A stretch of 35,097 bases of DNA from Octopus bimaculoides (Eukaryota): contig NC_068981.1 in the NCBI RefSeq assembly GCF_001194135.2, positions 14,074,670 to 14,109,766 on the forward strand, given 5' to 3'. Each line of letters opens with the position of its first letter. Position 1 is the first letter of the stretch. Shown piece after piece: positions 3,484 through 35,097 of the stretch. The translations under genes were made by a program, and so were the position numbers. Under the pieces are notes generated by a model. The model saw only the letters and a program-made list of their open reading frames with translations, ran no database searches and was not told the DNA's origin.

Positions 3484-3689
3484 NNNNNNNNNNNNNNNNN
3501 NNNNNNNNNNNNNNNNNNNNNNNNNNNNNNNNNNNNNNNNNNNNNNNNNNNNNNNNNNNNNNNNNNNNNNNNNNNNNNNNNNNNNNNNNNNNNNNNNNNN
3601 NNNNNNNNNNNNNNNNNNNNNNNNNNNNNNNNNNNNNNNNNNNNNNNNNNNNNNNNNNNNNNNNNNNNNNNNNNNNNNNNNNNNNNNNN
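3484..3689. other. Assembly gap; other gaps at about 15992-16079, 17543-18326, 21842-22387, 29785-30109, 33335-33344 and 34211-34220
   Basis: N runs, most flanked by microsatellites. Confidence 0.99.
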
Positions 3690-5515
3690 ATATATATTTG
3701 TGTGTGTGTGTAAAACTTAGATAAAACTTAGATTTGTTTCAACCAAAGATTGGTCCCGGCCATGTCTAACTTAATAGCACCACCTGATAGGGTTATCTAA
3801 ATCCTTTTTACAGTCAAGTTTGGTCTATGGTCCATTCAAGTAGTGAGTTCTTATTGAGTGAGTTGTATCCAGGTATACATATAAATCCAGTGAACATTTA
3901 AACACATAAGAGATGGTCATAACAGGACATCTAACCCGCTAGAAATAGTGATTAAGTTCAAAACCACTATTAGGTTAATTTCGAAAAGGAATGAATAATA
4001 AAAACGTTGTCCTATTATGGCCATCTCTTATGTGTTGTTTAAATGTACACTGTATTTATATGAATAATACATAGTTAGTCTATTGACTAGTTTTTTTCTT
4101 CTCGCTAGACCACTGGTAGCAAAATATTTCTTTTTTTTTTTTTTTTTTTTTTGCTACTCTGAAATTTATTAATATATATATATATATTTCATATTCTGTA
4201 TTTTTTTCTACAAACTTCAGCATATTCTGAGTTCTGTATTCTTGTTATTTTCTAGTATACAGCTATGATCAACACACTATGACTTCCAACCACATCTATC
4301 CCTTTTCCTGTAGCTTTCTTCAATTACGCATGCATAATCTACTCGGAAAACACGACAAGCCAAAACCTTAGATTTTCTGTGAGCGTTGACCTCGAAGATA
4401 ACCTCTAATGCGGATGTGCTAATCGTGTCATTTCGGCAGCAATAATACACAAACACTAATTATATATTTAAAGTGGTATCACATAACAACCCGCAGCATC
4501 ATATTCAGCATGAAAGCGGAGCACTCACAGTTACTCTCTAAATATTGAATCATACGACGATTACACATAGTGAAAGGACAACCCGAATATCGCTAGAATT
4601 GCTTCCATACCATCGTTTTTATCTATGCAGTGTGAGAAGATATTTCCACCTGCAATAATTATGAAGATACCTATGGATGTGTATTCCCCCCGCATCAAGG
4701 ACGGCACAGATGCAATTTCATATAGGCATTTTGGACTGATTGATTTAAACACACGCACAGCCTCACATTAACATGTGGAACATATGCGCGTTTTTTCACC
4801 TCTAGCTTTTCTATCTATATTCTGTTGGACACTGCTTCTTGTTGTGTCTACTCCATCAAGAGGCCGCACAAAGCAACACGTTCAGTCTCTCCTTCTCAAG
4901 AATTTTACCATCTGCAAAGGAAATTTAACTGCGAAATACACGAGCAACACCGTTACGTTCTGATCCAGCAATTGAGATACGTGTGTATGTGTGTGTGTGT
5001 GCGCGAAGGACAGTGACGGATGTATGCCTCATTATAAAGAAATGGTCAAATCAGATTTTCTATTTCCTAAGTATAACTCCTCGCAGCTTGTGTTTTTGGT
5101 CGTATAGTGCAATTTGAATCTTAAGAATTAAAAAGCTGTTAAGCTCTAGCATTTACAGCATTAAGAAGACTAAAGCACTCGATCTAAAAGAGACAGCATA
5201 TCAACCAGCAACAAAAATATTACCTTCATAATCTAACTTCATCGCCATTCGCCAAGTAACCATAGCAAATTTGAAACAAAATTTCTGAGGATACATGTTG
5301 TCTATAAGTCTAAACACGATGTTTAGGATCTATTGCAAGGATGCGATTACGAGAAAGTAAAAATAGGTCCATTAGAAATATCTACACATTATCCAGTCTA
5401 CTACAGAGATAACACAATGGCTGAAATTTCTGCTGTATAATCTTAAGGTATGCTTTATGTATTTATATTTACGTAACATTAGTTCCTTATTGCATTATTT
5501 GTACACTCAGACACA

Positions 5516-5552
<37 letters not shown>

Positions 5553-5553
<1 letters not shown>

Positions 5554-5840
5554 CCTTTTTGTTTGTTTATTTCACCGTTTCGTTTTCCTGTCTTGTTTTC
5601 CGTCCGCCACTACCCTCCACGAAAACAATTTAATTTGTGTTCGTGGGAAGAGCCATTTTAACGATGCGTACTGCCTTAATTCTTCGAAACGCCGGAGTTT
5701 TAATGGTGGCAGCTGATGAAGGGGATGTTTCTATGTGGCCTGCTTGTTTGTTGCACCTTTTTTTACCATTTTGTCCTTGTTCTTTTTCCACGTCATGTAC
5801 CCAGTTATGTATCTATATGTACATGTAGATGAATGTATAT
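5553..5840 (+). mobile_element. Penelope/retrozyme-like repeat carrying the permuted hammerhead; inserted next to (TA)n; boundaries approximate
   Basis: Homologous to 13315-13468 (-) and 34240-35089 (-). Shared blocks: taccctcc...atttaatttg...tttta.cga, ctgatgaa, ttct.tatgt.g..tg, catgtac. Confidence 0.7.
5666..5725 (+). ncRNA. Hammerhead ribozyme core with non-circularly permuted strand order (predicted cleavage after GUA, A5670)
   Basis: GCG-U-A (5666-5670), CUGCC (5671-75), UUAAU linker, UCUUC (5681-85), GAAA (5686-89), CGC (5690-92), 15-nt linker, GGCAG (5708-12), CUGAUGA (5713-19), A, GGGGA (5721-25). Stem I is CUGCC/GGCAG, stem II GGGGA/UCUUC, stem III CGC/GCG plus A15.1-U16.1. All conserved core nucleotides are present. 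Confidence 0.7.
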
Positions 5841-7031
5841 ACATACATGTACATATATATGCATATACTCATATATTGTTTATATATATATATACATACA
5901 TACATATGTGTATATATATGCACATATGTATACATATTTATACACACACACACACATACATGTGTGTATGTATGTGTGTGTATATACGCACATGTGTACG
6001 TATATGCGTGTCTGCGTTTAGGGGCATACATGTATTGCGTCTCTCACATCGTCTATTTGTTGTTTCTCATCCACACATCCACTCCTTGTCTTTCTGTCTG
6101 TCCTTTCTGTCTGTCTGTCTGTCTGTCTCATCAACTCTGCATATATATATATGTGTGTGTATGTGTGTACGTGTGTGTACGTGTGATTTAATGACATCTT
6201 CGTATGAAACCTCTTATGCCTTTATTATTATTTAGTGTGGAGTATTAACTCTTTTGTTGTAATAACTTGGCTCTGTGAAAATCGATTTTATAATGAATAG
6301 GCCGTGTAATTACAGTAGCCTCACAACGTCCGCAAAGAAGATTTCAATTGAACTCTTCCATTATTGAATATCAGAAGGAATTTCATTGCTAGAATAAAAT
6401 TGATTCAAAATAGGCGCAAATGTTTCGAAATTTCGAAATCAATTTCATAACCACGTTATTATACGCGCTTAAAAATGGAGAAAGAAAATGTAATGACATA
6501 GGCAAGTATAAGAAAAGAGAAAATAGGACGGGTAGAAAGAGAACAATGGATATTATGAACGATATACTAAGCACATCCCATACACAGTCACACGTACATG
6601 CAATCACTTTGTATTTTCTTTAAGATTGTTTCCTAGTCAACAGAATCTCAAGCGCCCTTTTTTCTTCTTCATATTAATCTCATTTAAGCCTTACCCAAAC
6701 AATAGCTACCTTTCTTTAAAATAGTATTCGGACGTGTGTCTTGATCATGAATATGCCCTGATTCAAGGTATATTGTGTATACCTTGAATTTACATTATTG
6801 GGGACACACTATACATTAATTTGAAATAGGCTTGCATCGCAAGGAATATATCGGTGACGACCTTATTTCAACTAATTTACAGTGTTTCTTCTTTTTTTTC
6901 TTTCTGGTAGATATCAATATACACCTATTCAATCTATTTTATGTAATTATGCATCATTTTCTAAACTGCATTGAAGCATGCAACTCTTCTATATAGATTA
7001 CCTCTTTGTACCTGTTCTAACAACAATCCTC

Positions 7032-7157
<126 letters not shown>

Positions 7158-7377
7158 GGGAGGCGAGCTGGAAGAAGCGTTATCACGCCGGGCGAAATGC
7201 TTAGCGGTATTTTGTCTGCCGTTACGTTCTGAGTTCAAACTCCGCCGAGGTCGACTTTGCCATTCATCCTTTCAGGATCGATTAAATAAGTACCAGTTAC
7301 GCACTGGGGTCGGTGTAATCGGCTTAAACCCTTTGTTTGTCCCCTCTATGTTTAGCCCCGCTGTGGGCAATTAAGAA
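7158..7377 (+). mobile_element. tRNA-derived SINE (aggcgg/cgagctggcagaa family)
   Basis: Head ggcgagctgg...gttctgagttcaaactccgccgaggtcgactttgcc; close homologs at 8886 and 31487; flanked by (AAT)n. Confidence 0.9.
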
Positions 7378-7424: not shown

Positions 7425-8313
7425 CATTTATTTGCCAAGAGGGCGAAGGATGAAGGGGCAATAAGACGACAGACATAAACTGTGGCGGTTTACATATAAC
7501 GAAATGATAAAGAGAAATAAATATAAAGTAAATATGTACGGAATATGCTGAAAAAGAAGAGACATGCATAGCATACAAAAGTTCAAAAATAAAAATAAAA
7601 ATCTGAGGAGAGGATGATAGAGAAGTGGCCTTCCAGATACAGAAATATCTCTAGTGATAATCATGGAACCACACTGTCCGAGATTTCCCTGAAACCCCAA
7701 GTGCGCTCTCCAATTTCTTCTCTCCGACTCACAAGTCTACACTTAGAGAGGTACCATCCACTTTTGCCATTTTCGCAACTTTCGCCCACCATTCAATAAA
7801 CTCACTCGAGGGCAACAATTCCCTCTCCACTATCAATTTCCTTTTCGAGTGAAACTTGAAAATCTCAATTAAAGCTATACAAAAGAGGAGTGTATCTGTC
7901 CTTATGCCTTTCAGCCTTGTCCACCAAACAAACCCTTTCGTCACAGCCGCACAGGCAAAGAGATACTGTCTTACCTGCCCAATTGAAGGATGGTGGTGGT
8001 GCGATCATCAACTACAGACTCGGCCGACAAACAGATCCGTTCCACACGTGACAGCAGCCATTCGACATAGCCTCACAATTCAGCAATGCCCGAACGAAGG
8101 CGTGCAGAACGGTTTCATCAGTCTGCGCACACCTCGGACAAGCCCATCTGACAGCACATCCGTGCCTGTAGAGTTTATCTCGAACCGGTAGCGCACCCCA
8201 CCCCCGGTAGCCCTGCCAGGTCAAGGACATCTGGAAATTATCCATGATCATTCCCGACCGGAAAATCCTCCAGAACACACAAGCCAGTTCGTTCTCGTCA
8301 GTGCCCAGAGTCT
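7425..8313 (-). mobile_element. 5'-truncated Tx1-like (L1 clade) LINE: ORF2 C-terminus with zf-RVT-type zinc finger, plus 3' UTR
   Basis: Frameshifted translation ...DNFQMSLTWQ...GALPVRDKLYRHG...ACPRCAQTDETVLHAF...KGFVWWTRLKG...FKFHSKRKLIVERE...VDL* (stop at 7729). CxxC...H finger; AATAAA and an (ATTATC)-like tail near 7430-7400. Confidence 0.8.
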
Positions 8314-8885: not shown

Positions 8886-9204
8886 AATGCGGTGAGTTGG
8901 CAGAATCGTTAGCACGCCGGTATTTCGTCTGCCGCTTGGTTCTGAGTTCAAATTCCGCCGAGTTCGACTTTGCCTTTCATCTTTTCGGGGTCGATAAAAT
9001 AATTACCAGTTACGAACTGCAGTCATGTAATCGACCAGCCCCCTTCCCAAAAAAATTTCAAAGCATTGTGCAAATCTGTAGTATTGAGCAGAATATTTAC
9101 TGTAGTGCATCTTTTATACCAAGACAAATCAATGTACATGATAATACTTCCAATCAGTTAAGATCAGAAACCACGAGAACCACTGTCTGGTACTGCATCA
9201 GGGC

Positions 9205-9235: not shown

Positions 9236-10812
9236 GTATGAGCTGAGAGAATTGTTTGCACACAGGACAAAACACTTAGCAGCATTTGTTGTCTAATTAG
9301 GTCCTGAGTTCAAATTCTGAAGCTGCCGACTTTGCGTTGTTTTTTTCTGTAGAGAAATACATCCTTATTTCGTCGAAATAAAAAAAAGGAAATATGTATG
9401 CATGAAGACCAAATTAAAGCGACGAGTTTTCGTCCCTTGGCATAATGGCTATGTTGACAAATGCCCAACATTTAGAATGCTGTTGAAGGTCTTATTGCTT
9501 TCCTTTTCTTGTTAATAATGTGAATTCCCCATCGCAGGAAGAGCATCATTCATTATCTCTTGAAACTGAGGCTGGATTGTATCCTGAGGCCGGAAACGTG
9601 TCTGAAGTTTTACAACAGAGTGTACTCGTCTAAAGGCAGTAACTTTAGTTTAGACGAGTGAGAGATCAAACGTAACATCCATTGTCTAGATGGAGTTAAC
9701 ATTAATTAATTACCGAGGTATAAAGAAGGCTTCGGAATTATAGGGATAATGAATTGTGGTGAATTTTATTCTTTGATGTATGAGATTTGATTTACCAAGT
9801 ATATTCTACTGAAACGGAGGAACCTGATCTGTCTTTCATAAAAAAAAAAAAAAAATAGCTATCTCACTTTCTGATTACAGTTTTCGAATCACTAACAGAA
9901 ACAAGAAATTAGAAGTGACGGACCATGTCGCTGTTATAAATGGCTTCAATTAAGCAGTGAAAATATGTGTTATTCTCAGTTATGTTCCTATTTTTCACAG
10001 CCTCCAGGACATATGTATTGACTTTGGATAGATGTACTTCACACTGATGTATCAATCTCATAGTAAATAATGTATTTCTTGGAAGCACAGCCTAGTTATC
10101 TCCCGTTTTCATTTACTGTGAAAAATATTTCAGTAATTGACTTTGTCAGTATCTGTGTCAGTAACATTACTTGCACGTAAACAAATATCGATTTTTTTTT
10201 TTTATAATGTAGCACAAGAGCAATCATGTAGTACAAATGGTAAATACGATTATTTGATATTCTTAAGTGTTGCATTAAGCATTACAAACTCAGAAAAATC
10301 TGCATCTAAATATCACCATAAATTCAACAGCGAAATTTTCTAAAGGGTATACAGCAAAAGCTTATATATTTCAAGAAGTTATAGCTAAATTGTTAAAATG
10401 AATAAATATATCAGCACTATATGCCATAAATATCATCTGAATTCTCTTTATATACATGTGATATTAATGCCTATAATGATACTCTTTGCCTAAGACTTAT
10501 TATGCTAGAAGACGAGCTAAAGACAAAGAAATACATAACATTATATATGAGAGTTGATCAATGTAATCTGAATGTGTAGGTTATCTATCAACACCCTATA
10601 CATTATCAACTCATAATAACATTGGATATATATTTCAAGACGCAGAGCGTAATTTATAAAAGAGATGATAACATTTATAACGTGACCTCATCAATAGGTT
10701 ATATTTTCGGCTAATATATCTATTACACAAGCAAAATGTCTACACTTTCATAAACATGTGTACGAATAATTTAAAGCTACTGTCTCTGCCTCTCTCCATC
10801 GCGGACTATTTA

Positions 10813-11000: not shown

Positions 11001-13314
11001 GAATATAAATGTATAGGCAAGATATATATCATGAAAACACAAACATATAATTGTGGGTATGTAGTCTCGGACAGGTATCGGTAATTACTCACATCAACAC
11101 AAACCCACGTCTACTTACATTATCTGGCGTGAGGGTAGGGTATGGAAATCGAAAAAGAAGAGTGGAAAATCTCAGGATAAAATTGTTTCGATCGTTTTAT
11201 CATATGGAATATCCGGTATAAAGAAAAAGTTAACTAAAACTAATTATGTTCTCAGGAAAGATAGCAATATTAATAATTTCGGAATATTTTAATTATTTCA
11301 ACAAGTAAATTATCTACACGGGCCTTACGTAGTTCTTATTACAAAATCATTTATATGAGATTGACTCCATTGTAACTTCAGAATTCGCGACGAAATCATC
11401 GTTTCCTGAGTGCTCAACTTTGTACAGAGGTCATTTTGGGGGTACATTTTAATTGGCTAATGACAAATGTATGTTTGACTTATTTGATTATATATAATCT
11501 AAGAGAGGCATTGAAACATAAGGATTCATTCAAAATATTTACAAGTAGATAATCGTTACGAGCAGATGTTAGAAAACAAAATTCTAACACTACAGTGGGT
11601 AATTCCAAAGATAAAATACATTTGATATTTAGAGTAATTTTTATCACACACCATTTATAAAAATCATCACCAGTGAATCGTAAACCTGGTTTTTGTTGAT
11701 GCATGTAATAATATGCATGATTTTAATGCAAGCGACTATGTTTGCATTAATGATGAAAGATCACACATAAACGAGTGAACTTTCATCATTGTAAAACTCA
11801 TCCTACATAATACTGCTCAGAATAAAATTAACTTTATTTGTAATTTCTTTCTATGATTATATGTTGCCTTTCTTATTTAGACCGAAGTGAGCCTTGCTCG
11901 AGCAGACGTGATATGTTGTCCTAGTATTTAATTAGCATATTTTAGGATATAGTTTATCTCGTCATTGTTTGGAATTTTTTTCTTACAGAACCACTGAACC
12001 TCGATACATGCTAGTAATAGAAGAGCCCCATTGGCTACTCTGCTACTAAATTGTATCAAGAGGAGATGAAAGTATTCATATTTTACGAGATTTGCTCAAG
12101 GGAATGTTCATTCATTTCTCCATGCGCATTCTCTGGTTAATGCATGTAAAATTTTCTCAACTTGAAATTAATGTTGTTGTACCCCTGCGTTTCTTTCGCA
12201 CATTAGATATTGATCAGACGCTTGGTCACGTTTTCTCCTGAATAGATTGAACCTGGGATATTTAGATTGACTTATATAAACATATAAATGTATTTAACGA
12301 TAGTTTCTAATAATTCTGTCTTCTAAAGCTTATACATTGTGAGACTTATACACTTTTGTGTCATCCAAATAATGAAGGCCCTTAAAAGTCACTTTAAGAC
12401 ATTCAGTACTTGGATGGCACGAATCTATCGGCCCAAAACATATGAAACTGAAAATCAATCGTGACAGGAAGTAAACTCATTAACTAGGCAGACACACCTA
12501 AACACCGAAAGAAATGTTATCTGGCGCTTTACCGATTTAACCTCCCCACAATAATAAAAATATTGAACACTCGTGTTTGATAAATAAATGTGTGAATTGG
12601 TATGTTGAAAAGTGAATCACTTGAAATGTTTGTGTCAATTTGTGTGATCTTTTGTGAATAACAGATTAAAAACTATCGATATTTTTGAAGCTGTGAATGC
12701 AAACACATCTGAAGCGATAATGATTTAGATAAACAATTCAGCCATACAATAATCTATCTAGACCGCTTGATACCAATTGTAAATTAGTAAACTGAGATGA
12801 CTATATATATATCTAATGTTGAAAACTACAATGCCATCTTGTTGCCCAATTAGTCATTTATTGACCATTCATTTTGCATTGTAAAAGGGTCAGGTAGAGT
12901 TAATTAGAATCAGCTGTAGCTTGCCTTATTTATAGAATATCTGATTTCGCAGATGTTACATAAAACGAATTTTCTTAAAAGTATTTCATGGTAGAAAATA
13001 TCACAAAGTATCACTTGTGCATTGGGTTTCTTTAGAGCCACAAGATAATAACTGGTTTTCTTTTCAAAATACATTCTTTATAAAAAATAAAAATAGTTGT
13101 GTTCAATTACAGAAGACAAAAGGCGGTGTTATATTTTCACAAAAGATCAACTTCTTTAAAATACAATAATTACATTAAATGTAATGGCGAATTAAATGTT
13201 GGGAAATACCTTTAGCATATGACTAAAAATTATATTGAAGTTATAGGTCTAAATGATACCATTTGTGATTATCCTTTTAATGAATTTGATAATCCTTATA
13301 GGGGAATATATATA

Positions 13315-13468
13315 ATGATTACAGAACATAAATCGAGCAACAGAACGTCACAAAATATCGTGGACAAAATGAAAAACAGAACATAAGTAGAGCATAGAAA
13401 CACACAAGCCACCTAGAGAACGTTTCCTTCATCAGCTGCCACCATTCTAGAACTAAGCGTCTCGAAGG
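13315..13468 (-). mobile_element. Truncated, decayed copy of the permuted-hammerhead repeat
   Basis: Minus strand: ccttc-GAGA-cgc-ttagttctagaatggt-GGCAG-CTGATGA-a-gga..., followed by a tail homologous to 5726-5810. The GUA-CUGCC strand is missing and GAAA has become GAGA. Confidence 0.75.
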
Positions 13469-15684
13469 CGCACACACACATGTATGTGTGAATGCGTTCA
13501 ATTCTGTGAAAGACTATATGATACACTTTCACAGTACTGAAAATATTTTATGAAAAATAAGAGCAATAAAATAAGAGAATTACATTACGATAAGGGATGT
13601 ATTGTTCAAAAAGTCATTCTTCTATGAAAATTAGCTTTAATATAACTAGGACTAAGACAATTTAACGACAATGATAGCGATAAGGAAGAGAAAGATTATG
13701 TTGAGAAGCAGTGATGATGAGGAGTATGATCAGTGTAACTGTAGTAGAAATCCACATTATTCACTGGAATCCTTTGGATTTAAGAGTGGACCTGACGGAG
13801 GAAATTTACCCATTGTCTGTATATGTCTATAAACAGCAAATTCATATGATGTATATATAATTATCTAAATAATTATGACGTGCATTCTAATCAACTAATT
13901 TCATAATTAGGAAAACTAGATGAGTAAATTCAAAATAAACTCTCAAAATGCAATGATTGTTTCTTTCTCTAGATATAAGTCTTCGTTTCAATCTCCTCTT
14001 AATTGTGTAGTCACTGAACAGGTAAAATATTCACCGTATTAGCAAGTGCAATTAATATTGGTTTGAAATTAGTCAATATCGTCATTTTGTCAACGTTGTT
14101 TGATATATGTTTAACAAATATTACTCTTACAAATAGTAGTGCTGCAGTCACTCCAATAATTATGAAATATGTTTTTGTTAAATGTATTAACTTTATATTT
14201 TAGACAGTTTGATATGTTTGGTCATCATAATTCTTTGCTGCATATTTAAATATTTTGTACGATGAAGACGCTATCACCTTATCATGATAAATTTTTGTTT
14301 TGAGGCAAATTCAAATGTGTTAAAGAGAGAAAAAAATACAATCCTAATCTATCCTGTTTTCATGCTAGATAATCCACTGATTATGATACACGCCAGCTGA
14401 CTCAAGAATATCATTCTCAATGTTTAGCATACTGTTAACAAAATTTTAATACAGAATATTCAAAGATAGTATCAAAAACAATTCCTCACAAAACCATTAA
14501 CTGTTTACTGATCTGCTTTCAGATATGACAACTTCCAACGGTTACCACAACTTCCCACGAGTATTCAGAGAAATTCGATTTTATTGATAAAAGACTTAAA
14601 TTTTAAACAAGGATATGAAAGTTAAATGCAAGACGGATTATAAATTGACAATACAATTTAAGCCAGTAGGGGAAAAAAGAAAAGAAAGAAATCCAAATAA
14701 AAGTTGCCATATTTTAATACAATATCTTTTTCTGTATTCTCAAGTGACATCAAGTTTGATGAAGAACAAAACAAAAACGTGTTTTGAACTACTTTAGCGA
14801 AGTAGTTACTATAGTAGAAATCAGGAGATATTAAAGGAATTAACATTGTTGTTGCGATTAGAAACGGAATGTTACTTTTATAATATATTTTTAATATATA
14901 TATTTTTTAAATCCTTCACTGTGTTAAATGGTAAAATTCAAACCATTCAGAAAACAGGTGAAAATAAATATGATACCCGTATTGTATTAATTTTCATAAT
15001 TCTCATATAAATATAGAAGAAAAAGCTTGTTCCCATTCATCAACATTAAAAGGGTGCTTAATGATTGTTAAGTGACATACAGAAAATGATAATATCACAA
15101 CGAGAGGTGCTATTACGGAGCTTTTATCTGGTTATGAATTAAATTTCAGTTGGTTATCACCTTCAGATTGATGTACAACTGACATTCACCTTACTCTCAT
15201 ATAAATTTTATGGTCTTTCAGCACATGGATGAAATGCTACTGAAGTATGGTGAAATGTAAATTCATTTCTTAAAATACACAAAGAATCGCTAGGCGTGTA
15301 CGGGATAAAAATGCGAGATAAAAAACTGAAAGTAAAAATTCCCCCGTAAATTATTGAAAGCCTTTGCAGGAAGTTCGTCAAATTTTTCTTCGTTAATGGG
15401 GAGAGAGTAAGAGAGGGAGAGCATTTTCTCACTAAAGATGTAATGCACAAGAAGCTGCAATAGACCTATAATATTAATAGTATTACAGTAAACATTTGCA
15501 TAATCTGATGGCGAAAAAGGAATTTACATCTACCTTGAACCTTAAATGACGACGTTTTATTTCATGAAATTAAACGAAGTTTCGAAGATAACATTTGAAG
15601 CCGCCAAACCTAGACCTCTTATAAATGCTTTTAAATTAACGGAAGAGATAATAATTCACGTGCATGCATACATACACACACACA

Positions 15685-15722
<38 letters not shown>

Positions 15723-16079
15723 AAAAAATAGAAAAGAAACTGACGCAGTTTCTCCAGGGCCAATATAATAGTGACATAACGAAAATTTATAAGACGTTGC
15801 AAATATTCTTCATGTGAGATTCTTATGTAAGTAGTTGCATACGCTTGTGTGTATGCTTCGACAGTTCATCCAACTCACTAACTCAGCCACGTGTTTACAA
15901 ACAAAGAAAAGTCTCTTAACTTAAAAAGTGTAGTTACTTTGTTAGCAACCAGACTGAACTTTCGCAAGCGTATGTGCATAGAATTCCGTCCNNNNNNNNN
16001 NNNNNNNNNNNNNNNNNNNNNNNNNNNNNNNNNNNNNNNNNNNNNNNNNNNNNNNNNNNNNNNNNNNNNNNNNNNNNNN

Positions 16080-17037: not shown

Positions 17038-19072
17038 CTCAAAAATATAGAACAAATGATAAAATATTGCTATTTTTTCAAAGTGATATTGATTGAAATT
17101 TACATTGAGAAATATATTCCGACGGGTGAGCAAAGAAAATACAAGGACGCGATGAATACGACAGCATTTCGAATCCTCTAGTGTAAATAAATTTGATTAA
17201 CTATTATAGAGACACATATGTAAGGAAGTATATGTATGCTTCTGTTTCTTAACTATATATTGTTTTGATATCGCTATGTCTGTATGCGAATCTTATTAGT
17301 GTGTGCAAACCATCACTATTTTTACTTTAACATGCGTGAAATGTTCTCATTTATACAGAGCAAAGTCTTAATTAACAAAGAAAATTTCCCTTGTTATTCC
17401 ATATAAACCAAAGTGTATTCTCTGATATTCAAAAAATCTAAACAGCTAACTTCTTTTATATCAATTTTATTTTCAACTTCTTATAATTGTTTAGAGGTCA
17501 GAAACAAAACTTAGAGTAATGACCTGGAAGATTTAATTTTCCNNNNNNNNNNNNNNNNNNNNNNNNNNNNNNNNNNNNNNNNNNNNNNNNNNNNNNNNNN
17601 NNNNNNNNNNNNNNNNNNNNNNNNNNNNNNNNNNNNNNNNNNNNNNNNNNNNNNNNNNNNNNNNNNNNNNNNNNNNNNNNNNNNNNNNNNNNNNNNNNNN
17701 NNNNNNNNNNNNNNNNNNNNNNNNNNNNNNNNNNNNNNNNNNNNNNNNNNNNNNNNNNNNNNNNNNNNNNNNNNNNNNNNNNNNNNNNNNNNNNNNNNNN
17801 NNNNNNNNNNNNNNNNNNNNNNNNNNNNNNNNNNNNNNNNNNNNNNNNNNNNNNNNNNNNNNNNNNNNNNNNNNNNNNNNNNNNNNNNNNNNNNNNNNNN
17901 NNNNNNNNNNNNNNNNNNNNNNNNNNNNNNNNNNNNNNNNNNNNNNNNNNNNNNNNNNNNNNNNNNNNNNNNNNNNNNNNNNNNNNNNNNNNNNNNNNNN
18001 NNNNNNNNNNNNNNNNNNNNNNNNNNNNNNNNNNNNNNNNNNNNNNNNNNNNNNNNNNNNNNNNNNNNNNNNNNNNNNNNNNNNNNNNNNNNNNNNNNNN
18101 NNNNNNNNNNNNNNNNNNNNNNNNNNNNNNNNNNNNNNNNNNNNNNNNNNNNNNNNNNNNNNNNNNNNNNNNNNNNNNNNNNNNNNNNNNNNNNNNNNNN
18201 NNNNNNNNNNNNNNNNNNNNNNNNNNNNNNNNNNNNNNNNNNNNNNNNNNNNNNNNNNNNNNNNNNNNNNNNNNNNNNNNNNNNNNNNNNNNNNNNNNNN
18301 NNNNNNNNNNNNNNNNNNNNNNNNNNATATATATATATATATATATATATAATATAAACACACAAAGAAAAAGAGAGAGAGAATGAGAGAGATTCGCATT
18401 TATCTTGAAAGTAACTTGTAACATAAGAGTAGATAAATAACAAGGGTGAACTGTAGATATATGTATTCAACCGTAAACGCTTCTGATCAACTCCTGGCAG
18501 TCAGATGGGTGTTAACTTAAGTGATATTCTTTGCTCAAGTATCGGAGAACATTTGTTCCTGACAATTATGTTGGAATTGTTATCTGTTCAACTCTCAGAG
18601 TAAATATTCGGACACATTGTAATAATATCAGAAGGCTAATAGGTTTCAATTGCAAAAAAAGACAATTGTAATCTATCTGACTATATTTTGATGCTTCTGT
18701 TCATAGAACGAACATAGTGTAAACGTATTTGCCTATGGTCTATAGAACAGTGTGTTACATTCACTCTAAAAATCGAAAAGATACCTATAAAGCTAAAATC
18801 TAGATTACATTAAATAGATACTAAAGGTGATACAAATATATTATCAAATTTCTATTTGACTACAGAGTCGCATTTACGGACGAAAAGGGAAGCAAGGAAG
18901 AAAAGAAATGGCAGACAGAGTAAACAATAGTAGCCTCATAAATAGTTACATCTACAAAACCTTTTACAAAGGAAATTTGGCATCGAAGGCACAAAAAAAA
19001 AAACACGCTCATATATACAAATTAGTTGAATGCGAATGTGTGTGTGTGTATTTTTCAGAATTTGGGTATATT

Positions 19073-20796: not shown

Positions 20797-21621
20797 GCTG
20801 GGTGCGGTGAGTATACTGTCGTCTAAATTACGCAGAAATTAAAATAACACTGACATCTCATTTTAAGACATGTATTTACCTAAATTACATAAAAATATCT
20901 TGAAGCACTAAAGAATAACTTTATTAATATAAATCGCCATTGGCTTATACTCGTCTGGACAGTCTCCTTGTTTAAGTTGGTGAACGCTGCCATAATTCTT
21001 GCCTTCAGTTCATCTTTTGTGCATAAGAAATTTTTGTTGGTCTCCCGCTCAGCACATAACGACCAAGGGAGCTGCAGTCTGGGAAGTTAGATGGCCAGAT
21101 ATTCGGGGTGGTCGCAGACATTGTCTGACAGCCATGACTGGGTTCTCTTGCTTGTGTAGCATGGTGCAGAGTCTTGTTGCCAGACATAGTGTCTTCCAAC
21201 AGCCACGCTCTTGACCCAGGCTAGCACTACCACCTCCAGGCACCTGACGTAGGTCTCCGTGTTGAGTCTGAGGCCGTGTGGGGAGATGAATGGAGGAATA
21301 ACGTCATCACTAGTGATCACTCCAAACACCATGATGTTGATTGGATGTTCGATTTTTATCGCTCCCGGTATATGCACTGTCCTCAGATTGACACCCAAAT
21401 ACTCTGAAATGTTCATATTGGAGTTTCCGCCCCGAATATCAAGGAGTACAGCATGTCGTTTCCAAATTTTCGGCAGAGTGAAGTACATCATGGTGCAATT
21501 TTCTCACAAAACGGTGCTCAACTGACCCTACTATACTCTGTAGTTGATAAAATAAAATGAAACAGTTCACATGCGTGAAATTAAAACTATAAAATGGAGA
21601 CAATTTACCGAACGCACATTA
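20797..21621 (-). mobile_element. Internally deleted Tc1/mariner DNA transposon, DD37D (maT) type
   Basis: Translation IMVFGVITSD...YVWQQDSAPCYTSKRTQSWLSDN...PNIWPSNFPDCSSL matches the QQD...WPxNSPDxNPLD region; restoring the small indel gives about 37 residues between the second and third catalytic D. The N-terminal HTH (ISEYLGVNLRTV) joins this directly, so the first-D region is deleted. Degenerate TIRs at about 20801-20820 (gtgcggtgagtatactgtc) and 21599-21618 (rc gtgcgttcggtaaattgtc); TA-rich flanks. Confidence 0.85.
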
Positions 21622-21841: not shown

Positions 21842-22387
21842 NNNNNNNNNNNNNNNNNNNNNNNNNNNNNNNNNNNNNNNNNNNNNNNNNNNNNNNNNNN
21901 NNNNNNNNNNNNNNNNNNNNNNNNNNNNNNNNNNNNNNNNNNNNNNNNNNNNNNNNNNNNNNNNNNNNNNNNNNNNNNNNNNNNNNNNNNNNNNNNNNNN
22001 NNNNNNNNNNNNNNNNNNNNNNNNNNNNNNNNNNNNNNNNNNNNNNNNNNNNNNNNNNNNNNNNNNNNNNNNNNNNNNNNNNNNNNNNNNNNNNNNNNNN
22101 NNNNNNNNNNNNNNNNNNNNNNNNNNNNNNNNNNNNNNNNNNNNNNNNNNNNNNNNNNNNNNNNNNNNNNNNNNNNNNNNNNNNNNNNNNNNNNNNNNNN
22201 NNNNNNNNNNNNNNNNNNNNNNNNNNNNNNNNNNNNNNNNNNNNNNNNNNNNNNNNNNNNNNNNNNNNNNNNNNNNNNNNNNNNNNNNNNNNNNNNNNNN
22301 NNNNNNNNNNNNNNNNNNNNNNNNNNNNNNNNNNNNNNNNNNNNNNNNNNNNNNNNNNNNNNNNNNNNNNNNNNNNNNNNNNNNNNN

Positions 22388-28200: not shown

Positions 28201-29268
28201 CTTATACACACACACTTATATGTACGTCATTTATGTATATAAATATACACACATGTATATATGTGTGGGGGGAGGCACGTTCCTGCGTGGATGAATAGAT
28301 GCTTGTGAATGTGTGTATTTAAGAAGCTTCTACTGCAACGACGCAGACTCGAGTTCGTTGTCACGGTGGAGCAATTATGATATCTGTCATAACATTGATA
28401 TAGCAACATGTAAATGAAGTTTGCTAAACTGAAATTGTCCAGAAACTCTCAAACGATATATATATATATGCACTTGTATATGTTTCCATCATGCTGGAGG
28501 TTAAAAAATAGTTGTTTTGTAAGAACATGCCTTGTGGTCTGAAGTTTCGCATTAGTTAGTTACATCGCACGTGCGCCTTACGTTTTGCCTTCAAAAATCA
28601 ATGAAACAAATATCGAAGTTCTACAGATCACTATAATCGAATAAAGCCCTTAAAGGCCGAGCCCTCACAATGACCGCAGTCCATTGGCAGACATTAGCGA
28701 AATAATATAATAATGAAATGATACAAATCACTAGAAATGCTACGAACACCGTTTTTTGTAAGTATTACCAAAATAGTATAGTTAAATTAACAGACAACAC
28801 TGCGTCTTTGAGTCAACCTGGTATTCTGTTAAACTGTATACATCAATAACAGTTCCAATTATTCTTCAATCATTGTAGCTGAAGGCACATAATTGTCAGT
28901 GGCTGTTGTTTTCTGTCTCATTTTTTTTCGTTTTTTTCCCCCCAGTTATCTGCCATTATAGTATTTCTCTTTTCTTTTATTCGCCTGTGTTCAACAATTT
29001 TGTCCTTCTGGTAATTAAGTGCAGACAAATATTTATAAGCAAACGCTCAAACACAGACGCATAAATCATACATATACACATACGCGTGTGTATGTGTATC
29101 TGTGCACATGCGTGTATGTGTGTGTGTGTGTGTGTGTGCGTGAGAGTGTGTGTGCATGTGTGTATATGTGTATTTTCCTCTTTTCCTTGTTTCAGTCATT
29201 AGACTGCGGCCATGCTTGGACACTGCTGTGAAGAATTCTTCTACGCATATATACATACATGTATAAAT

Positions 29269-29754: not shown

Positions 29755-30831
29755 ATATATATATCATATGCATATCTATATTTTNNNNNNNNNNNNNNNN
29801 NNNNNNNNNNNNNNNNNNNNNNNNNNNNNNNNNNNNNNNNNNNNNNNNNNNNNNNNNNNNNNNNNNNNNNNNNNNNNNNNNNNNNNNNNNNNNNNNNNNN
29901 NNNNNNNNNNNNNNNNNNNNNNNNNNNNNNNNNNNNNNNNNNNNNNNNNNNNNNNNNNNNNNNNNNNNNNNNNNNNNNNNNNNNNNNNNNNNNNNNNNNN
30001 NNNNNNNNNNNNNNNNNNNNNNNNNNNNNNNNNNNNNNNNNNNNNNNNNNNNNNNNNNNNNNNNNNNNNNNNNNNNNNNNNNNNNNNNNNNNNNNNNNNN
30101 NNNNNNNNNATATAATTATGTGTATTTCTTCTATCTTTTTGACAATGAATTCAAAGTTTCGGTTTCCCGTTAGCAAACTGTTGAGCTACTTAAATTTTTC
30201 AGTTGAAAATTTACTTAAAGCAAGTCTTGAACACTAACAACAAATTTGACCTCCACTTGACCTATGCGTTCATGAAAATTGAAGCAGCCACACTTGTTTA
30301 TTAGTAATTTGTTTATAAGCCTAAAATTATACCATACCATTTTAACCTCTTACACTAACGAAACTATATAACATATTCTGATTCGTCTTTAAAAAACCTT
30401 CAACCAACACAAACTTTGACCCCAAAGTGACATATCTAACTTGCAGCACCCAATTTTGCATTCATGCTTGTCACAACCAAAACACTAATAGCGCAACGAA
30501 GGAATTTCGCTTTCATTTAACCAACTAACTGTTGCTTCCAAAGAACACAAACTTATTTTGCCAAACCAGAAATATTATATTATTATTTTTTCTTCCAAAC
30601 ACAGTAATGTGTCACCATATCGCCGTTCACCTATCGCGCACACTGTACGTTGCGGATTTTTTTTGGCTCATATATGTAAATTTATATCGCAGACTCCTCA
30701 GTATATTGTGGGTTTCTGCGGTCGATAGGCAGTTCGATAAGATTCGATGACCCATATTAATCTAAGTCTTATGGTGGCATGAGAACCGAAACTTTGAAAT
30801 TACAGTAAACTTTTCCTGTGTTTGTTTGCAA

Positions 30832-30965
30832 GTACACTTACATTAAATATGTGCGTGTATATGTTTGTACACTTACATTAAATATGTGCGTGTATACGTT
30901 TGTACACTTACATTAAATATGTGCGTGTATATGTTTGTACACTTACGTTAAATATGTGTGCGTAC
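30832..30965. repeat. Minisatellite, 35-bp unit, about 3.8 copies
   Basis: gtacacttacattaaatatgtgcgtgtatatgttt starts at 30832, 30867, 30902 and 30937. Confidence 0.97.
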
Positions 30966-31321: not shown

Positions 31322-31486
<165 letters not shown>

Positions 31487-31720
31487 AAGGCGGTAAGCTG
31501 GCAGAAACGTTAGCACGCAGGATGATATGCTTAGCGTTATTTCTTCTGCCGTTACGTTCTGAGTTCAAATTTCGCCGAGGTCGATTTCGCCATTCATCCT
31601 TTCAGCGTCGATAAATTAAGTACCAGTTACGCACTGGAGTCGATGTAATCGACTTAATCCCATTGTCTGTCCTTGTTTGTCCCTTCTATGTTTAGCCCCT
31701 TGTGAGCAATGAAGAAATAA
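31487..31720 (+). mobile_element. tRNA-derived SINE, same family as 7158; a further decayed head at about 31740-31900
   Basis: aaggcggtaagctggcagaaacgttagcacg...gttctgagttcaaatttcgccgaggtcg...aagtaccagttacgcactgg. Confidence 0.9.
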
Positions 31721-33725: not shown

Positions 33726-33761
<36 letters not shown>

Positions 33762-33764
<3 letters not shown>

Positions 33765-33952
33765 TGTTTCAGTTATTTAACAGCGGCCATGCTTGAGACA
33801 CTGCCTTTAGTCGAACAAATCGAACCCAGGAATTATTCTTTGTAAGCCTTGTACCTAATCTATCGAACTCCTTTGCAGAACCGCTAAGTTACGGGGACGT
33901 AAGCATTCCAACATCGGTTGTCAAGCGATGGTGGGGTGAAAAACACAGACAT

Positions 33953-33989
<37 letters not shown>

Positions 33990-34183
33990 AACACACACAC
34001 ACACACATACACACACACATATATATATGACGGGCTCCTTTGTGTTTCATTCTGCTGAATCCACTCATAAGGCTTTGGTCGACACAAGGCTACAATAGAA
34101 ATCACGTATCCAAGGTTCCCTGCAGTAGGATTGAACCCGGGAACACGTGGTTAGTAAGCAAACTACTTACCACCCAGCCACTC
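33762..34183 (-). mobile_element. tRNA-derived composite SINE, same family as 2643
   Basis: Minus strand: gagtggctgggtggtaagtagtttgc...ggttcaatcc...ggaaccttggatacgtg...caacc gatgttggaatgctttacgtccccgtaac. Confidence 0.88.
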
Positions 34184-34239
34184 ATATATATATATATATA
34201 TATATATATANNNNNNNNNNATATATATATGCATATATA

Positions 34240-35089
34240 CATACGTTTATGTACATACTTACATCTATACTTATATGCATATGTGGGCACAGGGCGTCAT
34301 GAAACGTGTACAACATAAAAATACGAAGTACGAGTACATGGAATATGAACTAGCTTTCGGACAACGAAATATAAAAAAGGAAAACAAGACAAACAACATA
34401 AAGAACGACCGTTCATCAGTTGTTGGCTGTTTTTCTACTCTCGTACTTTGAACATTTAACTACGATATAGGCCTTCGATAAAACAGTTGCTCTCTCAAAG
34501 CAAATTAAATAAAATTTGGTATTTTGCGGAGGGTAAAAATTGGTAACACAAACAGGACAGTGAAAACAAACAGGAAGGGCTGCTAAGCCTATACGAGGTT
34601 GTGGTGACGAATGCATAAATCAAGCTTGGACAGGAGACAGACTAGAACACGTCTTCCTTGTTCTATTTACAACGGAGAGAAAGAATCACAAGTTAGGAGA
34701 AGAAAGAAAGATGGCCGGTTGTCACATGGGAGCCATGTGAGCATGGGAGGAGGAGTGAGGTAGAGAGAGTGACAGAGTAATAGGATAGAATACTGGGAGA
34801 AGAGGTGGTAAAAGAATAAGTCTGAGAAAAAGGAAAAAACGAATGAGTATAAAGATCCTATAGAGTGCGCATCGGAATTATCAAGATAAAACTTACTTGG
34901 ATGCGCGGCGTTCAATCATAGAATAATATAAATAATATATGTATGCATATATAGGTACTATATGTACATACTTACATCTACACGTGTACAACAAAAAGTT
35001 ACGTGGTAAGAGTACATGGAATATGAACTATTTTTTGGAACGAAAGACACAAATAGAAAACAAGACAAAAGAACGACCCTTCATCAATT
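34240..35089 (-). mobile_element. Partial tandem (about 670-bp period) of a diverged relative of the permuted-hammerhead repeat
   Basis: Segment 34240-34420 recurs at 34955-35089 (tcatca at 34413 and 35081). Minus strand has ggcctatatcg...gttc-aaag-tac...caacaa-CTGATGA-acgg, in the same order as the 5666 motif; the upstream flank is homologous to 5553-5665. Confidence 0.7.
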
Positions 35090-35097
35090 ATATATAT

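What the first reader, a model, noticed from the sequence alone, without database searches (positions are those of the whole stretch)
5666..5725. Hammerhead ribozyme with a non-circularly permuted (rearranged) strand order
Seen in sequence: all three hammerhead strands are present with intact core bases and complementary stems. Strand A is GCG-U-A|CUGCC, strand C is UCUUC-GAAA-CGC, and strand B is GGCAG-CUGAUGA-A-GGGGA. The order is A-C-B. Established: types I, II and III are the circular permutations B-C-A, C-A-B and A-B-C, so A-C-B fits none of them and standard type I/II/III descriptors would miss it. Inference: the linkers fit the known 3D fold. A 5-nt linker joins the distal ends of stems I and II, which lie side by side in the active ribozyme. 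A 15-nt linker spans from stem III back to stem I. The extra A after CUGAUGA also appears in the Penelope-type HHR at 16936-43. As I recall, natural non-circular HHR permutations were reported only recently (Weinberg lab); whether this family is already catalogued needs checking.
Basis: partly seen in the sequence, partly recalled or inferred. Interest (0 to 1): 0.92.

Follow-up and report, generated by a model that had tools for sequence, protein, structure and literature searches.

The report
Permuted hammerhead look-alike in a repeat
Every piece of a hammerhead self-cutting RNA is present here in a rearranged order first described in 2023, but it sits in one copy of a decaying genomic repeat, lacks a helix the proven examples need, and is missing from the sister copies, so it is most likely a look-alike and not a working ribozyme.

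Summary
At 5666-5725(+) lie GCG-U-A|CUGCC, UCUUC-GAAA-CGC and GGCAG-CUGAUGA-A-GGGGA, joined by 5-nt and 15-nt linkers. This order (site block, GAAA block, CUGAUGA block) is the "type SGC" hammerhead of Eckert et al. 2023, so the permutation is already catalogued. That paper found it only in metatranscriptome RNAs, never in the genome of a known organism.

The match is rare: about 1e-6 to 2e-5 per window for an SGC-shaped descriptor, or roughly 0.03-0.6 per Gb.

It lies in the least-diverged of four copies of a ~280-330-nt interspersed repeat. None of the other copies keeps the motif:
- c2 has GAGA and no alignable site block.
- c3 has CAAA, AACAA in stem I, and the CUGCC strand mostly deleted.
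- c4 has UUGAUGA and is cut off 5' of the core.

Stems I and II show no compensatory change. [quoted passage not shown] Stem II is weak and a competing register is slightly stronger.

No further copies could be retrieved. Best reading: fortuitous, non-functional motif (~0.7). Genuine SGC ribozyme in an animal repeat: ~0.17.

The parts
5666..5675 (+). Block S (site strand): GCG (stem III 3' side), U16.1, A17 (predicted cleavage 3' of A5670), CUGCC (stem I 5' side)
   Evidence: Read directly and found by the descriptor scan. Not retained in copies c2 or c3.
5676..5680 (+). Linker 1 (UUAAU), joining the distal end of stem I to the distal end of stem II
   Evidence: It is 5 nt here against 3 nt in my 5-bp-stem parse of SGC-1, SGC-2 and SGC-3; the paper says 'typically three'.
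5681..5692 (+). Block G: UCUUC (stem II 3' side), GAAA, CGC (stem III 5' side)
   Evidence: c2 has CTTCGAGACGC and c3 has TGTTCAAAGTACG.
5693..5707 (+). Linker 2 (CGGAGUUUUAAUGGU). [quoted passage not shown]
   Evidence: Its best duplex with the 25 nt 3' of block C is -4.6 kcal/mol, equal to the shuffle mean (49% of shuffles as good). The only Watson-Crick partner, ACCAUU at 5766-5771, lies 40 nt downstream and is not significant.
5708..5725 (+). Block C: GGCAG (stem I 3' side), CUGAUGA core, one extra A, GGGGA (stem II 5' side)
   Evidence: The 21-mer AATGGTGGCAGCTGATGAAGG is identical in c2. c3 has AACAA-CTGATGA-A-CGGTC and c4 has TTGATGA-A-GGGTC.
5553..5831 (+). Repeat copy c1, the least-diverged of four copies. 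It starts directly after (TA)16 at 5521-5552 and runs into a TG/TA-rich simple-repeat tail.
   Evidence: Smith-Waterman z=9.4 against c2 and z=9.7 against c3, each versus 500 shuffles. nhmmer on the family profile places it at 5561-5831. Site patterns are and the (TA)n coordinates.
13301..13605 (-). Repeat copy c2. It has GAGA instead of GAAA, block C is intact, and a (TG)n run stands where block S would be.
34300..34619 (-). Repeat copy c3. CTGATGAA is kept, but GAAA has become CAAA(G), the stem I strand is AACAA, and CUGCC is mostly deleted.
34982..35087 (-). Repeat copy c4, cut off 5' at the core by (TA)n and the window end. The core reads TTGATGA.
5616..5647 (+). Hairpin of the repeat upstream of the motif (arms CCACGAA / TTCGTGG). 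It is kept in c2 with three pairs changed on both sides.
   Evidence: c1 folds at -14.4 kcal/mol (z -3.5) and c2 at -11.7 (z -3.3); c3 is weak.

Best explanation
A complete hammerhead constellation (core CUGAUGA, GAAA, U-A cleavage dinucleotide, three complementary stems) is present in site-GAAA-CUGAUGA order. This is the topology of the already described type-SGC hammerhead. It most likely is not an evolved or working ribozyme. It is a fortuitous arrangement inside one copy (c1) of an old, roughly 280-330-nt interspersed repeat in a repeat-rich, AT-rich eukaryotic genome.

Shown: the motif itself, its rarity, the four-copy repeat family, the absence of the motif in the other copies, and the missing fourth helix.

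Inferred: that the RNA, if made at all, does not fold into the active pseudoknotted junction efficiently, because nothing clamps stems I and II and stem II is marginal.
For: 1. Sister copies do not keep the motif.
   - c2 has GAGA (A14 to G) and no alignable block S.
   - c3 has CAAA in place of GAAA, AACAA in place of GGCAG, and 4 of the 5 CUGCC bases deleted.
   - c4 has UUGAUGA.
   - No change in any copy is compensated across stems I or II, and a search around c2 found no block S.
2. [quoted passage not shown]
   - In SGC-1, SGC-2, SGC-3 and every alignment row I could read it is 4-12 bp. It abuts or lies 2 nt from the stem I 3' strand, and follows stem II after 1-2 nt in most rows.
   - Disrupting it abolished SGC-3 cleavage and restoring it rescued cleavage.
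   - In nested folding it is the dominant helix of the validated ribozymes (pair probability 0.77-0.99).
   - Here, linker 2 against the 3' flank gives -4.6 kcal/mol, the same as the shuffle mean.
3. Stem II is weak.
   - It scores -1.9 kcal/mol with tandem G.U pairs, against -7.1 and -4.8 in SGC-1 and SGC-3.
   - The alternative register GAAGG/UCUUC, which consumes G8 and A9, scores -2.3 and is available in both c1 and c2 (sequences).
4. The competing nested fold is as good as the hammerhead stems. At -16.3 kcal/mol it pairs CUGCC with GGUGG and CUUCG with CGGAG, and the region is no more stable than shuffles (z -0.2). A nested fold shared by c1 and c2 pairs GCAGCUG, including C3-G5, with downstream GUGGCYUGC.
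5. About one match of this shape is expected by chance per animal-sized genome (0.03-0.6 per Gb).
6. Eckert et al. searched RefSeq with SGC descriptors and found no such RNA in genomes of known organisms.
Against: 1. The per-window chance probability is low: 1e-6 to 2e-5 for an SGC-shaped descriptor and about 2e-4 for any block order.
2. The architecture resembles the validated SGC ribozymes beyond block order. Stems I and II are both 5 bp, exactly one extra nucleotide follows CUGAUGA, and a short linker joins stems I and II.
3. c1 is the least-diverged copy: only 24 sites are unique to c1, against 61 for c2 and 51 for c3. Most core positions of c1 are shared with at least one other copy. The family ancestor could therefore have carried the full motif and the other copies could simply have decayed.
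4. The repeat starts at a (TA)n tract, shows 5' truncation and has same-orientation and inverted neighbours. Craig et al. 2021 describe these traits for Penelope-like elements, whose canonical clades carry hammerheads near their 3' ends. That link is only an analogy; no PLE reading frame was found.
Confidence: 0.7

Rival explanations
1. It is a genuine type-SGC hammerhead encoded by the repeat family. The master element's sense RNA self-cleaves 3' of A5670, for example to process read-through or multimeric retroelement transcripts as proposed for Penelope-like elements and retrozymes. Under this reading c1 is a little-decayed copy and c2-c4 are dead copies.
For: - Low chance probability.
- The dimensions match validated SGC ribozymes: 5-bp stems I and II, one extra nucleotide after the core, and a short I-II linker.
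- c1 is closest to the family ancestor.
- GAAA, CUGAUGA-A, GGCAG and GCGU are each supported by at least one other copy.
- A stem-III-like hairpin persists in c3 as UCGUA...UACGA, with its outer pair changed on both sides.
- The motif lies on the strand that carries the simple-repeat 3' tail, and 5' truncations end at (TA)n, as for PLE-type insertions.
- Craig et al. noted hammerhead core halves in non-canonical arrangements in Naiad PLEs.
Against: [quoted passage not shown]
- Stem II is weak and out-competed.
- Stems I and II show no covariation in any copy, and c3 and c4 (a separate subfamily) have no hammerhead at all.
- The cleavage site lies about 113 nt inside the repeat, not at a unit boundary.
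- No SGC hammerhead has been reported in any cellular genome despite a RefSeq-wide search.
- No PLE reading frame lies nearby.
Confidence: 0.17
2. It is an accidental but catalytically competent hammerhead limited to this one locus. The sequence happens to satisfy the minimal requirements and would cleave slowly in vitro, with no biological role. This would resemble the lone GCS-1 sequence of Caballeronia peredens.
For: - All invariant core bases are present and all three stems can form.
- Stem I is strong, at -6.8 kcal/mol.
- GCS-1, a single sequence without covariation support, did cleave partially in vitro.
Against: The same structural weaknesses apply: no clamp helix, a marginal stem II, and competing folds. 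In SGC-3, loss of any one of the four helices gave no visible cleavage.
Confidence: 0.08
3. The conserved segments (CTTCGARACGC, AATGGTGGCAGCTGATGAAGG, the upstream hairpin) serve some other role in the repeat, such as a nested RNA structure or a protein-binding site for its mobilisation. In that case the hammerhead resemblance is incidental.
For: - The upstream hairpin is kept in c1 and c2 with three pairs changed on both sides.
- A nested fold shared by c1 and c2 uses block C.
- A 21-nt stretch is identical between c1 and c2 against about 79% background identity.
Against: - Only two to four copies are available.
- Apart from a 4-pair upstream helix that rests on a doubtful alignment, the pairs of the nested fold are invariant or changed on one side only, so it has no convincing covariation support.
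- A 21-nt identical run is not unusual at 79% identity (my estimate).
- No Rfam family matches.
Confidence: 0.05

Closest known systems
Type-SGC hammerhead ribozymes (HRIMA-1 motif and type-SGC variants), Eckert, Friedrich, Weinberg & Weinberg, Nucleic Acids Res 2023 (PMC10085705)
   Same: - Same 5'-to-3' order of site block, GAAA block and CUGAnGA block.
- All invariant core nucleotides are present.
- Stems I and II are 5 bp.
- One unpaired nucleotide sits between CUGAUGA and stem II.
- A short linker goes directly from stem I to stem II.
- The predicted cleavage site is near the 5' end of the motif.
   Different: - No helix joins the outer ends of stems I and II.
- The linker is 5 nt, not 2-4.
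- The extra nucleotide is A, not U.
- Stem II has tandem G.U pairs.
- Stem I is not the conserved AUGUU/AACAU of HRIMA-1.
- H17 is A where the three tested ribozymes have C.
- It sits in eukaryotic genomic DNA inside an interspersed repeat. Known members come from metatranscriptome RNAs, associated with hairpin ribozymes and proposed to be circular.
- There is no covariation support.
GCS-1, the single candidate type-GCS hammerhead in Caballeronia peredens (same paper)
   Same: It is a lone genomic sequence that fits a non-circular hammerhead permutation, with no homologues to give covariation. The authors called it a weak candidate of unclear biological significance.
   Different: GCS-1 was tested and cleaved partially in vitro. 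It has long stems (7 bp or more in the printed structure) and no extra nucleotide. The present motif is untested and has shorter, weaker stems.
Canonical hammerheads of animal retroelements: type I motifs in Penelope-like element pseudo-LTRs and in retrozymes (Cervera & de la Pena 2014, Lunse et al. 2017, from my own knowledge; Craig et al. 2021, PMC8557442)
   Same: The motif lies in a short, 5'-truncating, (TA)n-associated repeat, on the strand carrying the 3' tail. That is the kind of place where animal hammerheads are normally found.
   Different: - Those hammerheads are type I (order C-G-S), and Rfam has hammerhead models, none of which matches this window. No canonical hammerhead can be drawn here.
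- No PLE reading frame was detected in the window.
- The assignment of this repeat to PLEs is an untested analogy.
'HHR_core' and 'HHR_half_core' annotations in Naiad PLEs (Craig et al. 2021)
   Same: CUGANGA and GAAA are present in a retroelement 3' region in an arrangement that fits no canonical descriptor, with GAAA allowed on either side of the core.
   Different: Those annotations are string matches with no claimed stems or activity. Here all three stems can be drawn. I could not compare sequences because the supplement is not held.

Membership tests
Type-SGC hammerhead (Eckert et al. 2023) | Blocks in the order S (site), G (GAAA), C (CUGAnGA), each block uninterrupted | tested here: met
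   The same descriptor recovers SGC-1, SGC-2 and SGC-3 and this site, all as order SGC.
Type-SGC hammerhead (Eckert et al. 2023) | Invariant core: C3 U4 G5 A6 N7 G8 A9, G12 A13 A14, the A15.1-U16.1 pair, and H17 not G | tested here: met
   CUGAUGA at 5713-5719, GAAA at 5686-5689, U5669, A5670.
Type-SGC hammerhead (Eckert et al. 2023) | Stems I and III can form | tested here: met
   CUGCC/GGCAG gives -6.8 kcal/mol and GCGU/ACGC gives -3.4 kcal/mol, comparable to or stronger than in SGC-1 and SGC-3.
Type-SGC hammerhead (Eckert et al. 2023) | Stem II can form with a G10.1-C11.1 closing pair | tested here: inconclusive
   Five pairs are possible, but two are tandem G.U. The helix scores -1.9 kcal/mol against -7.1 (SGC-1) and -4.8 (SGC-3). 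The competing register GAAGG/UCUUC, at -2.3, uses G8 and A9.
Type-SGC hammerhead (Eckert et al. 2023) | One extra nucleotide between CUGAnGA and stem II | tested here: met
   One nucleotide is present (A5720). It is U in SGC-1, SGC-2, SGC-3 and in nearly all alignment rows I could read; one garbled row shows none. That this is a family trait is my reading of the printed sequences; the authors do not state it.
Type-SGC hammerhead (Eckert et al. 2023) | Short linker, 'typically three nucleotides', from stem I directly to stem II | tested here: inconclusive
   It is 5 nt here (UUAAU), against 3 nt in my 5-bp-stem parse of the validated examples and 'typically three' in the paper. It is sterically plausible but outside the observed range.
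Type-SGC hammerhead (Eckert et al. 2023) | A helix joining the other sides of stems I and II (the flanks of block C), required for SGC-3 cleavage | tested here: not met
   Linker 2 against the 25-nt 3' flank gives -4.6 kcal/mol, equal to the shuffle mean. The only 6-bp Watson-Crick partner lies 40 nt downstream (11.7% of shuffles do as well) and has pair probability 0.015. The helix is present in all readable published sequences.
Type-SGC hammerhead (Eckert et al. 2023) | Homologues conserve the core and show covariation in stems I-III | tested here: not met
   Three other copies in the window: c2 has GAGA and no S block; c3 has CAAA, AACAA, and CUGCC deleted; c4 has UUGAUGA. Stems I and II show no compensated change; only a stem-III-like hairpin persists in c3. 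With only four copies this test has low power.
Type-SGC hammerhead (Eckert et al. 2023) | Site-specific self-cleavage, abolished by mutating G5 | not testable with these tools
   This requires in vitro transcription and cleavage assays.
Type-SGC hammerhead (Eckert et al. 2023) | Context: metatranscriptome RNAs associated with hairpin ribozymes and proposed to be circular; not found as DNA | tested here: not met
   The window is eukaryote-like genomic DNA with microsatellites, assembly gaps and LINE- and SINE-like repeats. Rfam finds no hairpin or other ribozyme. The paper reports no SGC RNA in genomes of known organisms.
Canonical hammerhead types I, II and III (Rfam hammerhead families) | Three-way junction without pseudoknots, in block order C-G-S, G-S-C or S-C-G | tested here: not met
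   No Rfam hammerhead hit at gathering score or at E<=10. The descriptor scan over all six orders finds only the SGC arrangement.
Penelope-like element 3' end or pseudo-LTR | Adjacent reverse transcriptase / GIY-YIG endonuclease frame or pseudo-LTR tandem structure, (TA)n target preference, 5' truncation | tested here: inconclusive
   (TA)16 abuts the c1 start, c4 is truncated at (TA)n, and c3 and c4 lie in the same orientation. These fit the traits listed. The only reverse-transcriptase-related Pfam hit is a zf-RVT fragment at 8012-8278, just below the curated cutoff, and no GIY-YIG domain was found.

The most novel reading that the evidence does not exclude
The repeat is a non-autonomous retroelement, possibly mobilised by Penelope-like elements. 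Its master copy encodes a working type-SGC hammerhead that dispenses with the stem I-II clamp helix. That would be the first non-circularly permuted ribozyme found in a cellular (animal) genome and in DNA form. It might also explain why some retroelement lineages appear to lack canonical hammerheads.
Probability: 0.15. Interest if true: 0.85.

Novelty: not a real feature. Interest (0 to 1): 0.3.

Why it matters
If the motif were a real ribozyme, non-circular hammerhead permutations would extend from metatranscriptome RNAs (proposed to be circular and virus-like) into animal genomes and transposable elements. It would also show that the SGC fold can work without its clamp helix, and give a reason to re-scan retroelements that "lack" hammerheads using permuted descriptors.

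As things stand, the useful results are narrower:
1. The topology is already catalogued as type SGC.
2. A descriptor this loose is expected to hit about once per animal-sized genome by chance, so single-sequence matches need family-level or experimental support.
3. The locus is one copy of a definable repeat family, which makes the decisive test cheap.

Tried and rejected
More copies from outside the window. All attempts failed:
- The 21-mer shared by c1 and c2 had no exact match in metagenome, prokaryote-genome or viral contigs.
- A protein search with a transposase-like ORF found nothing.
- An exact-protein contig look-up found nothing.

More natural SGC ribozymes for a profile: the HRIMA-1 pattern had no match in metagenome or viral contigs. 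I therefore used the three validated sequences rebuilt from the oligonucleotide table, plus the alignment rows printed in the supplement.

Canonical hammerhead using sequence outside the span: rejected. No usable GAAA lies downstream of the core in any copy, and the scan over all six orders finds only SGC.

Opposite strand: no core there (read).

Coding exon: frames are open for 60-63 codons in c1 and c2, sharing 'MVAADEG' and 'WWQLMK'. However, the shared frame is broken by an indel upstream and by stops in c2, so this is not coding.

Terminal inverted repeats of one DNA transposon (c1 and c2 are inverted, 7.5 kb apart): rejected. The interior is a mosaic of other repeats, and c3 and c4 lie elsewhere.

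C/D-box snoRNA (UGAUGA as box C): no CUGA box D downstream (read).

Tandem, retrozyme-like array of c4 and c3: rejected. The intervening 355 nt is not repeated after c3 beyond the simple-repeat tail.

Correction to an early conclusion. I first concluded that the repeat starts exactly at block G, which would have made block S flanking DNA. That was wrong. c3, and the hairpin shared with c2, show that the repeat extends more than 100 nt further upstream.
Full report
**What is in the sequence**

- Site block (S): GCG-U-A|CUGCC at 5666-5675.
- Linker 1: UUAAU at 5676-5680.
- GAAA block (G): UCUUC-GAAA-CGC at 5681-5692.
- Linker 2: CGGAGUUUUAAUGGU at 5693-5707.
- CUGAUGA block (C): GGCAG-CUGAUGA-A-GGGGA at 5708-5725.

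Stem I has five Watson-Crick pairs. Stem III has three Watson-Crick pairs plus A15.1-U16.1. Stem II has five pairs, two of them tandem G.U, once the extra A is left unpaired. Rfam finds nothing in the whole window at gathering thresholds. It finds no hammerhead in 5300-6100 even at E<=10. That is expected, because in this block order all three stems cross one another.

**Is it more than chance?**

I wrote a descriptor with these features: 5, 5 and 3-bp stems with G.U allowed; CUGANGA; 0 or 1 nucleotide after the core; GAAA; U followed by a non-G; any of the six block orders; span up to 120 nt.
- It hits only this site on both strands of the window.
- Among 1500 dinucleotide-preserving shuffles, 4 had any hit and none had one as good.
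- Keeping the real sequence and replacing the core words with 2519 composition-matched decoys gave 2 loose hits and none as good.
- A planted-core simulation gave 2.7e-4 loose and 1.1e-5 equally good hits per CUGAUGA site, spread evenly over the six orders. The window has 7 CTGATGA and 20 CTGANGA sites.

For a descriptor fixed in advance from the validated type-SGC ribozymes (order SGC, linker 1 up to 6 nt, linker 2 up to 20 nt, exactly one extra nucleotide), the expectation is 2e-5 (loose) or 1e-6 (as good) per window. That is 0.6 or 0.03 per Gb. The match is very unlikely for one window, but about one is expected in an animal-sized genome. Eckert et al. likewise expected false positives from such pattern searches and required covariation.

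**What is already known**

Eckert, Friedrich, Weinberg and Weinberg (2023, PMC10085705) divide the hammerhead into blocks S (site), G (GAAA) and C (CUGAnGA). Types I, II and III are CGS, GSC and SCG.

They report 583 type-SGC sequences (407 HRIMA-1 motif, 176 variants). Features they describe include a linker of 'typically three nucleotides' from stem I straight into stem II, and a further helix that binds the other sides of stems I and II. In SGC-3, disrupting any of the four helices abolished cleavage and compensatory changes restored it. They found no such RNA in genomes of known organisms, apart from one unsupported type-GCS sequence in a bacterium. The RNAs come from metatranscriptomes and are associated with hairpin ribozymes. 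No later paper in the library reports type SGC in an animal genome.

**Comparison with validated SGC ribozymes**

I rebuilt SGC-1, SGC-2 and SGC-3 from the oligonucleotide table. My descriptor recovers all three as order SGC. Parsed with 5-bp stems I and II, each has a 3-nt linker 1, a 9-11-nt linker 2 and exactly one extra nucleotide (U) after CUGAUGA. The HRIMA-1 alignment rows printed in the supplement show the same extra U in nearly every row (one garbled row shows none). Every row also has a 4-12-bp helix whose 5' strand abuts, or lies 2 nt from, the stem I 3' strand. In most rows its 3' strand follows stem II after one or two nucleotides.

Its linker 1 is 5 nt.

It has no clamp helix.
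- Linker 2 against the next 25 nt gives -4.6 kcal/mol, exactly the shuffle mean.
- The only Watson-Crick partner (AAUGGU with ACCAUU at 5766-5771) lies 40 nt away and is not significant.
- In nested folding the clamp helix is the dominant element of the validated ribozymes (pair probability 0.77-0.99). The candidate has nothing equivalent.

Stem II here scores -1.9 kcal/mol, against -7.1 and -4.8 in SGC-1 and SGC-3. It is slightly weaker than the alternative register GAAGG/UCUUC, which would consume G8 and A9. The region's minimum-energy fold (-16.3 kcal/mol, z -0.2) pairs CUGCC with GGUGG and CUUCG with CGGAG.

**The surroundings: a four-copy repeat**

The flank of the core is identical at a second CTGATGA site on the minus strand at 13435. 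The 21-mer AATGGTGGCAGCTGATGAAGG occurs exactly twice in the window.
- c1-c2: Smith-Waterman z=9.4 against 500 shuffles.
- c1-c3: z=9.7, where c3 is a third copy at 34619-34300(-).
- c2-c3: no detectable similarity to each other (z=1.0).
- c4: a profile of the three copies finds a fourth copy at 35087-34982(-) with E=4e-7.

Site patterns make c1 the least-diverged copy: 24 sites are unique to c1, against 61 unique to c2 and 51 unique to c3.

The repeat starts at 5553, directly after (TA)16 at 5521-5552. It runs about 280-330 nt into a TG/TA-rich simple-repeat tail that c3 and c4 share. c4 is cut off 5' at the core, next to (TA)n.

The window is eukaryote-like, with abundant microsatellites, seven runs of N, tRNA-like SINE copies and a zf-RVT fragment. 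By recollection the SINE sequences look cephalopod-like, but I could not test that.

**What the other copies say**
- c2 keeps GGCAG-CUGAUGA-A but has GAGA for GAAA, GGAAA for the stem II strand (three pairs at best), and a (TG)n run where block S would be.
- c3 keeps only CUGAUGA-A. GAAA is CAAA(G), the stem I strand is AACAA, and four of the five CUGCC bases are deleted. The upstream strand has no matching change.
- c4 has UUGAUGA.
- A directed search around c2 found no block S.

Two caveats apply. There are only four old copies. And because c1 is closest to the ancestor, and most of its core bases are supported by at least one other copy, an ancestral motif that decayed in c2-c4 cannot be excluded. 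A stem-III-like hairpin does persist in c3 (UCGUA...UACGA).

**What the repeat might be**

Its (TA)n association, 5' truncation, and same-orientation (c3 and c4) and inverted (c1 and c2) neighbours recall Craig et al.'s description of Penelope-like elements. Canonical PLE clades carry hammerheads near their 3' ends. For Naiad elements the authors noted hammerhead core halves that fit no descriptor. This raises the prior for a real ribozyme somewhat. It remains an analogy: no reverse-transcriptase or GIY-YIG frame of that kind was found, and no sequence comparison was possible.

**Weighing it**

For a real ribozyme:
- The rarity of the match.
- The SGC-like dimensions.
- The least-decayed host copy.
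- The plausible retroelement setting.

Against:
- The missing clamp helix, which is experimentally needed in the one SGC ribozyme where it was tested.
- The marginal stem II, which a competing register out-competes.
- No support from three sister copies, including a whole subfamily without the motif.
- A cleavage site in the middle of the unit.
- The absence of any SGC hammerhead from cellular genomes in a RefSeq-wide search.

My estimates:
- About 0.7 that this is a fortuitous, non-functional constellation.
- About 0.17 that it is a genuine family-encoded SGC hammerhead.
- About 0.08 that it is an accidental but active single-locus ribozyme.
- About 0.05 that the conserved segments serve another role.

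**Limits**

No additional family members could be obtained from any collection. No additional natural SGC sequences could be obtained either. The decisive family census and the cleavage assay therefore remain to be done.

Noticed in passing
This arm has CTGATGA but AAAAC. The other arm has GAAAC but CTGGTG and a 10-nt deletion. Rfam gives no hammerhead hit at E<=10. A weak tRNA-like match (16.6 bits, below threshold) lies just upstream, so it looks like a tRNA-derived SINE pair.
   Followed up: partly
window 5616-5647 (+); 13504-13534 (-); 34494-34529 (-): A hairpin about 35 nt upstream of the GAAA block is kept in the repeat copies with different stems: c1 CCACGAA/TTCGTGG, c2 CTGTGAAAG/CTTTCACAG, c3 GCAAA/TTTGC. 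Three pairs are changed on both sides between c1 and c2. Fold z-scores are -3.5 (c1) and -3.3 (c2); c3 is weak. This may be a real structural element of the repeat.
   Followed up: partly
window 5521-5552, 34185-34210, 35088-35097: Copies of the repeat abut (TA)n tracts, and one copy (c4) is truncated 5' at such a tract. This resembles the (TA)n target preference and 5' truncation described for Naiad and Neptune Penelope-like elements. No matching reading frame was found.
   Followed up: partly
window 7156-7342, 8918-9024, 31486-31672; also 9281-9340, 31753-31812, about 34000-34180: There are several copies of tRNA-derived SINE-like repeats (GAGTTCAAATTCCGCCGAGGTCGAC...). A second SINE-like family occurs at 1725-1787, 29156-29218 and 33733-33795. 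By recollection they resemble cephalopod SINEs; this was not tested.
   Followed up: no
window 8012-8278 (-): An ORF fragment matches Pfam zf-RVT, the zinc-binding region of reverse transcriptases (E=1.2e-5, 26.4 bits, just under the 27.5-bit cutoff). It is probably a LINE remnant.
   Followed up: partly
window 21087-21491 (-): A 134-aa ORF contains '...WQQDSAPCYTSKRTQSWL...', which by eye resembles the DDE region of Tc1/mariner transposases. Pfam gave no hit at E<=0.01, and the protein database shared almost no words with it.
   Followed up: partly
window 3484-3689, 15992-16079, 17543-18326, 21842-22387, 29785-30109, 33335-33344, 34211-34220: Seven runs of N (assembly gaps), mostly inside microsatellite tracts. 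The window comes from a draft assembly, and repeat copy numbers and boundaries near the gaps are uncertain.
   Followed up: no
window 30797-30964: A short tandem array with a 35-nt period (GTACACTTACATTAAATATGTGCGTGTATATGTTT), four to five units at 95-98% identity.
   Followed up: no
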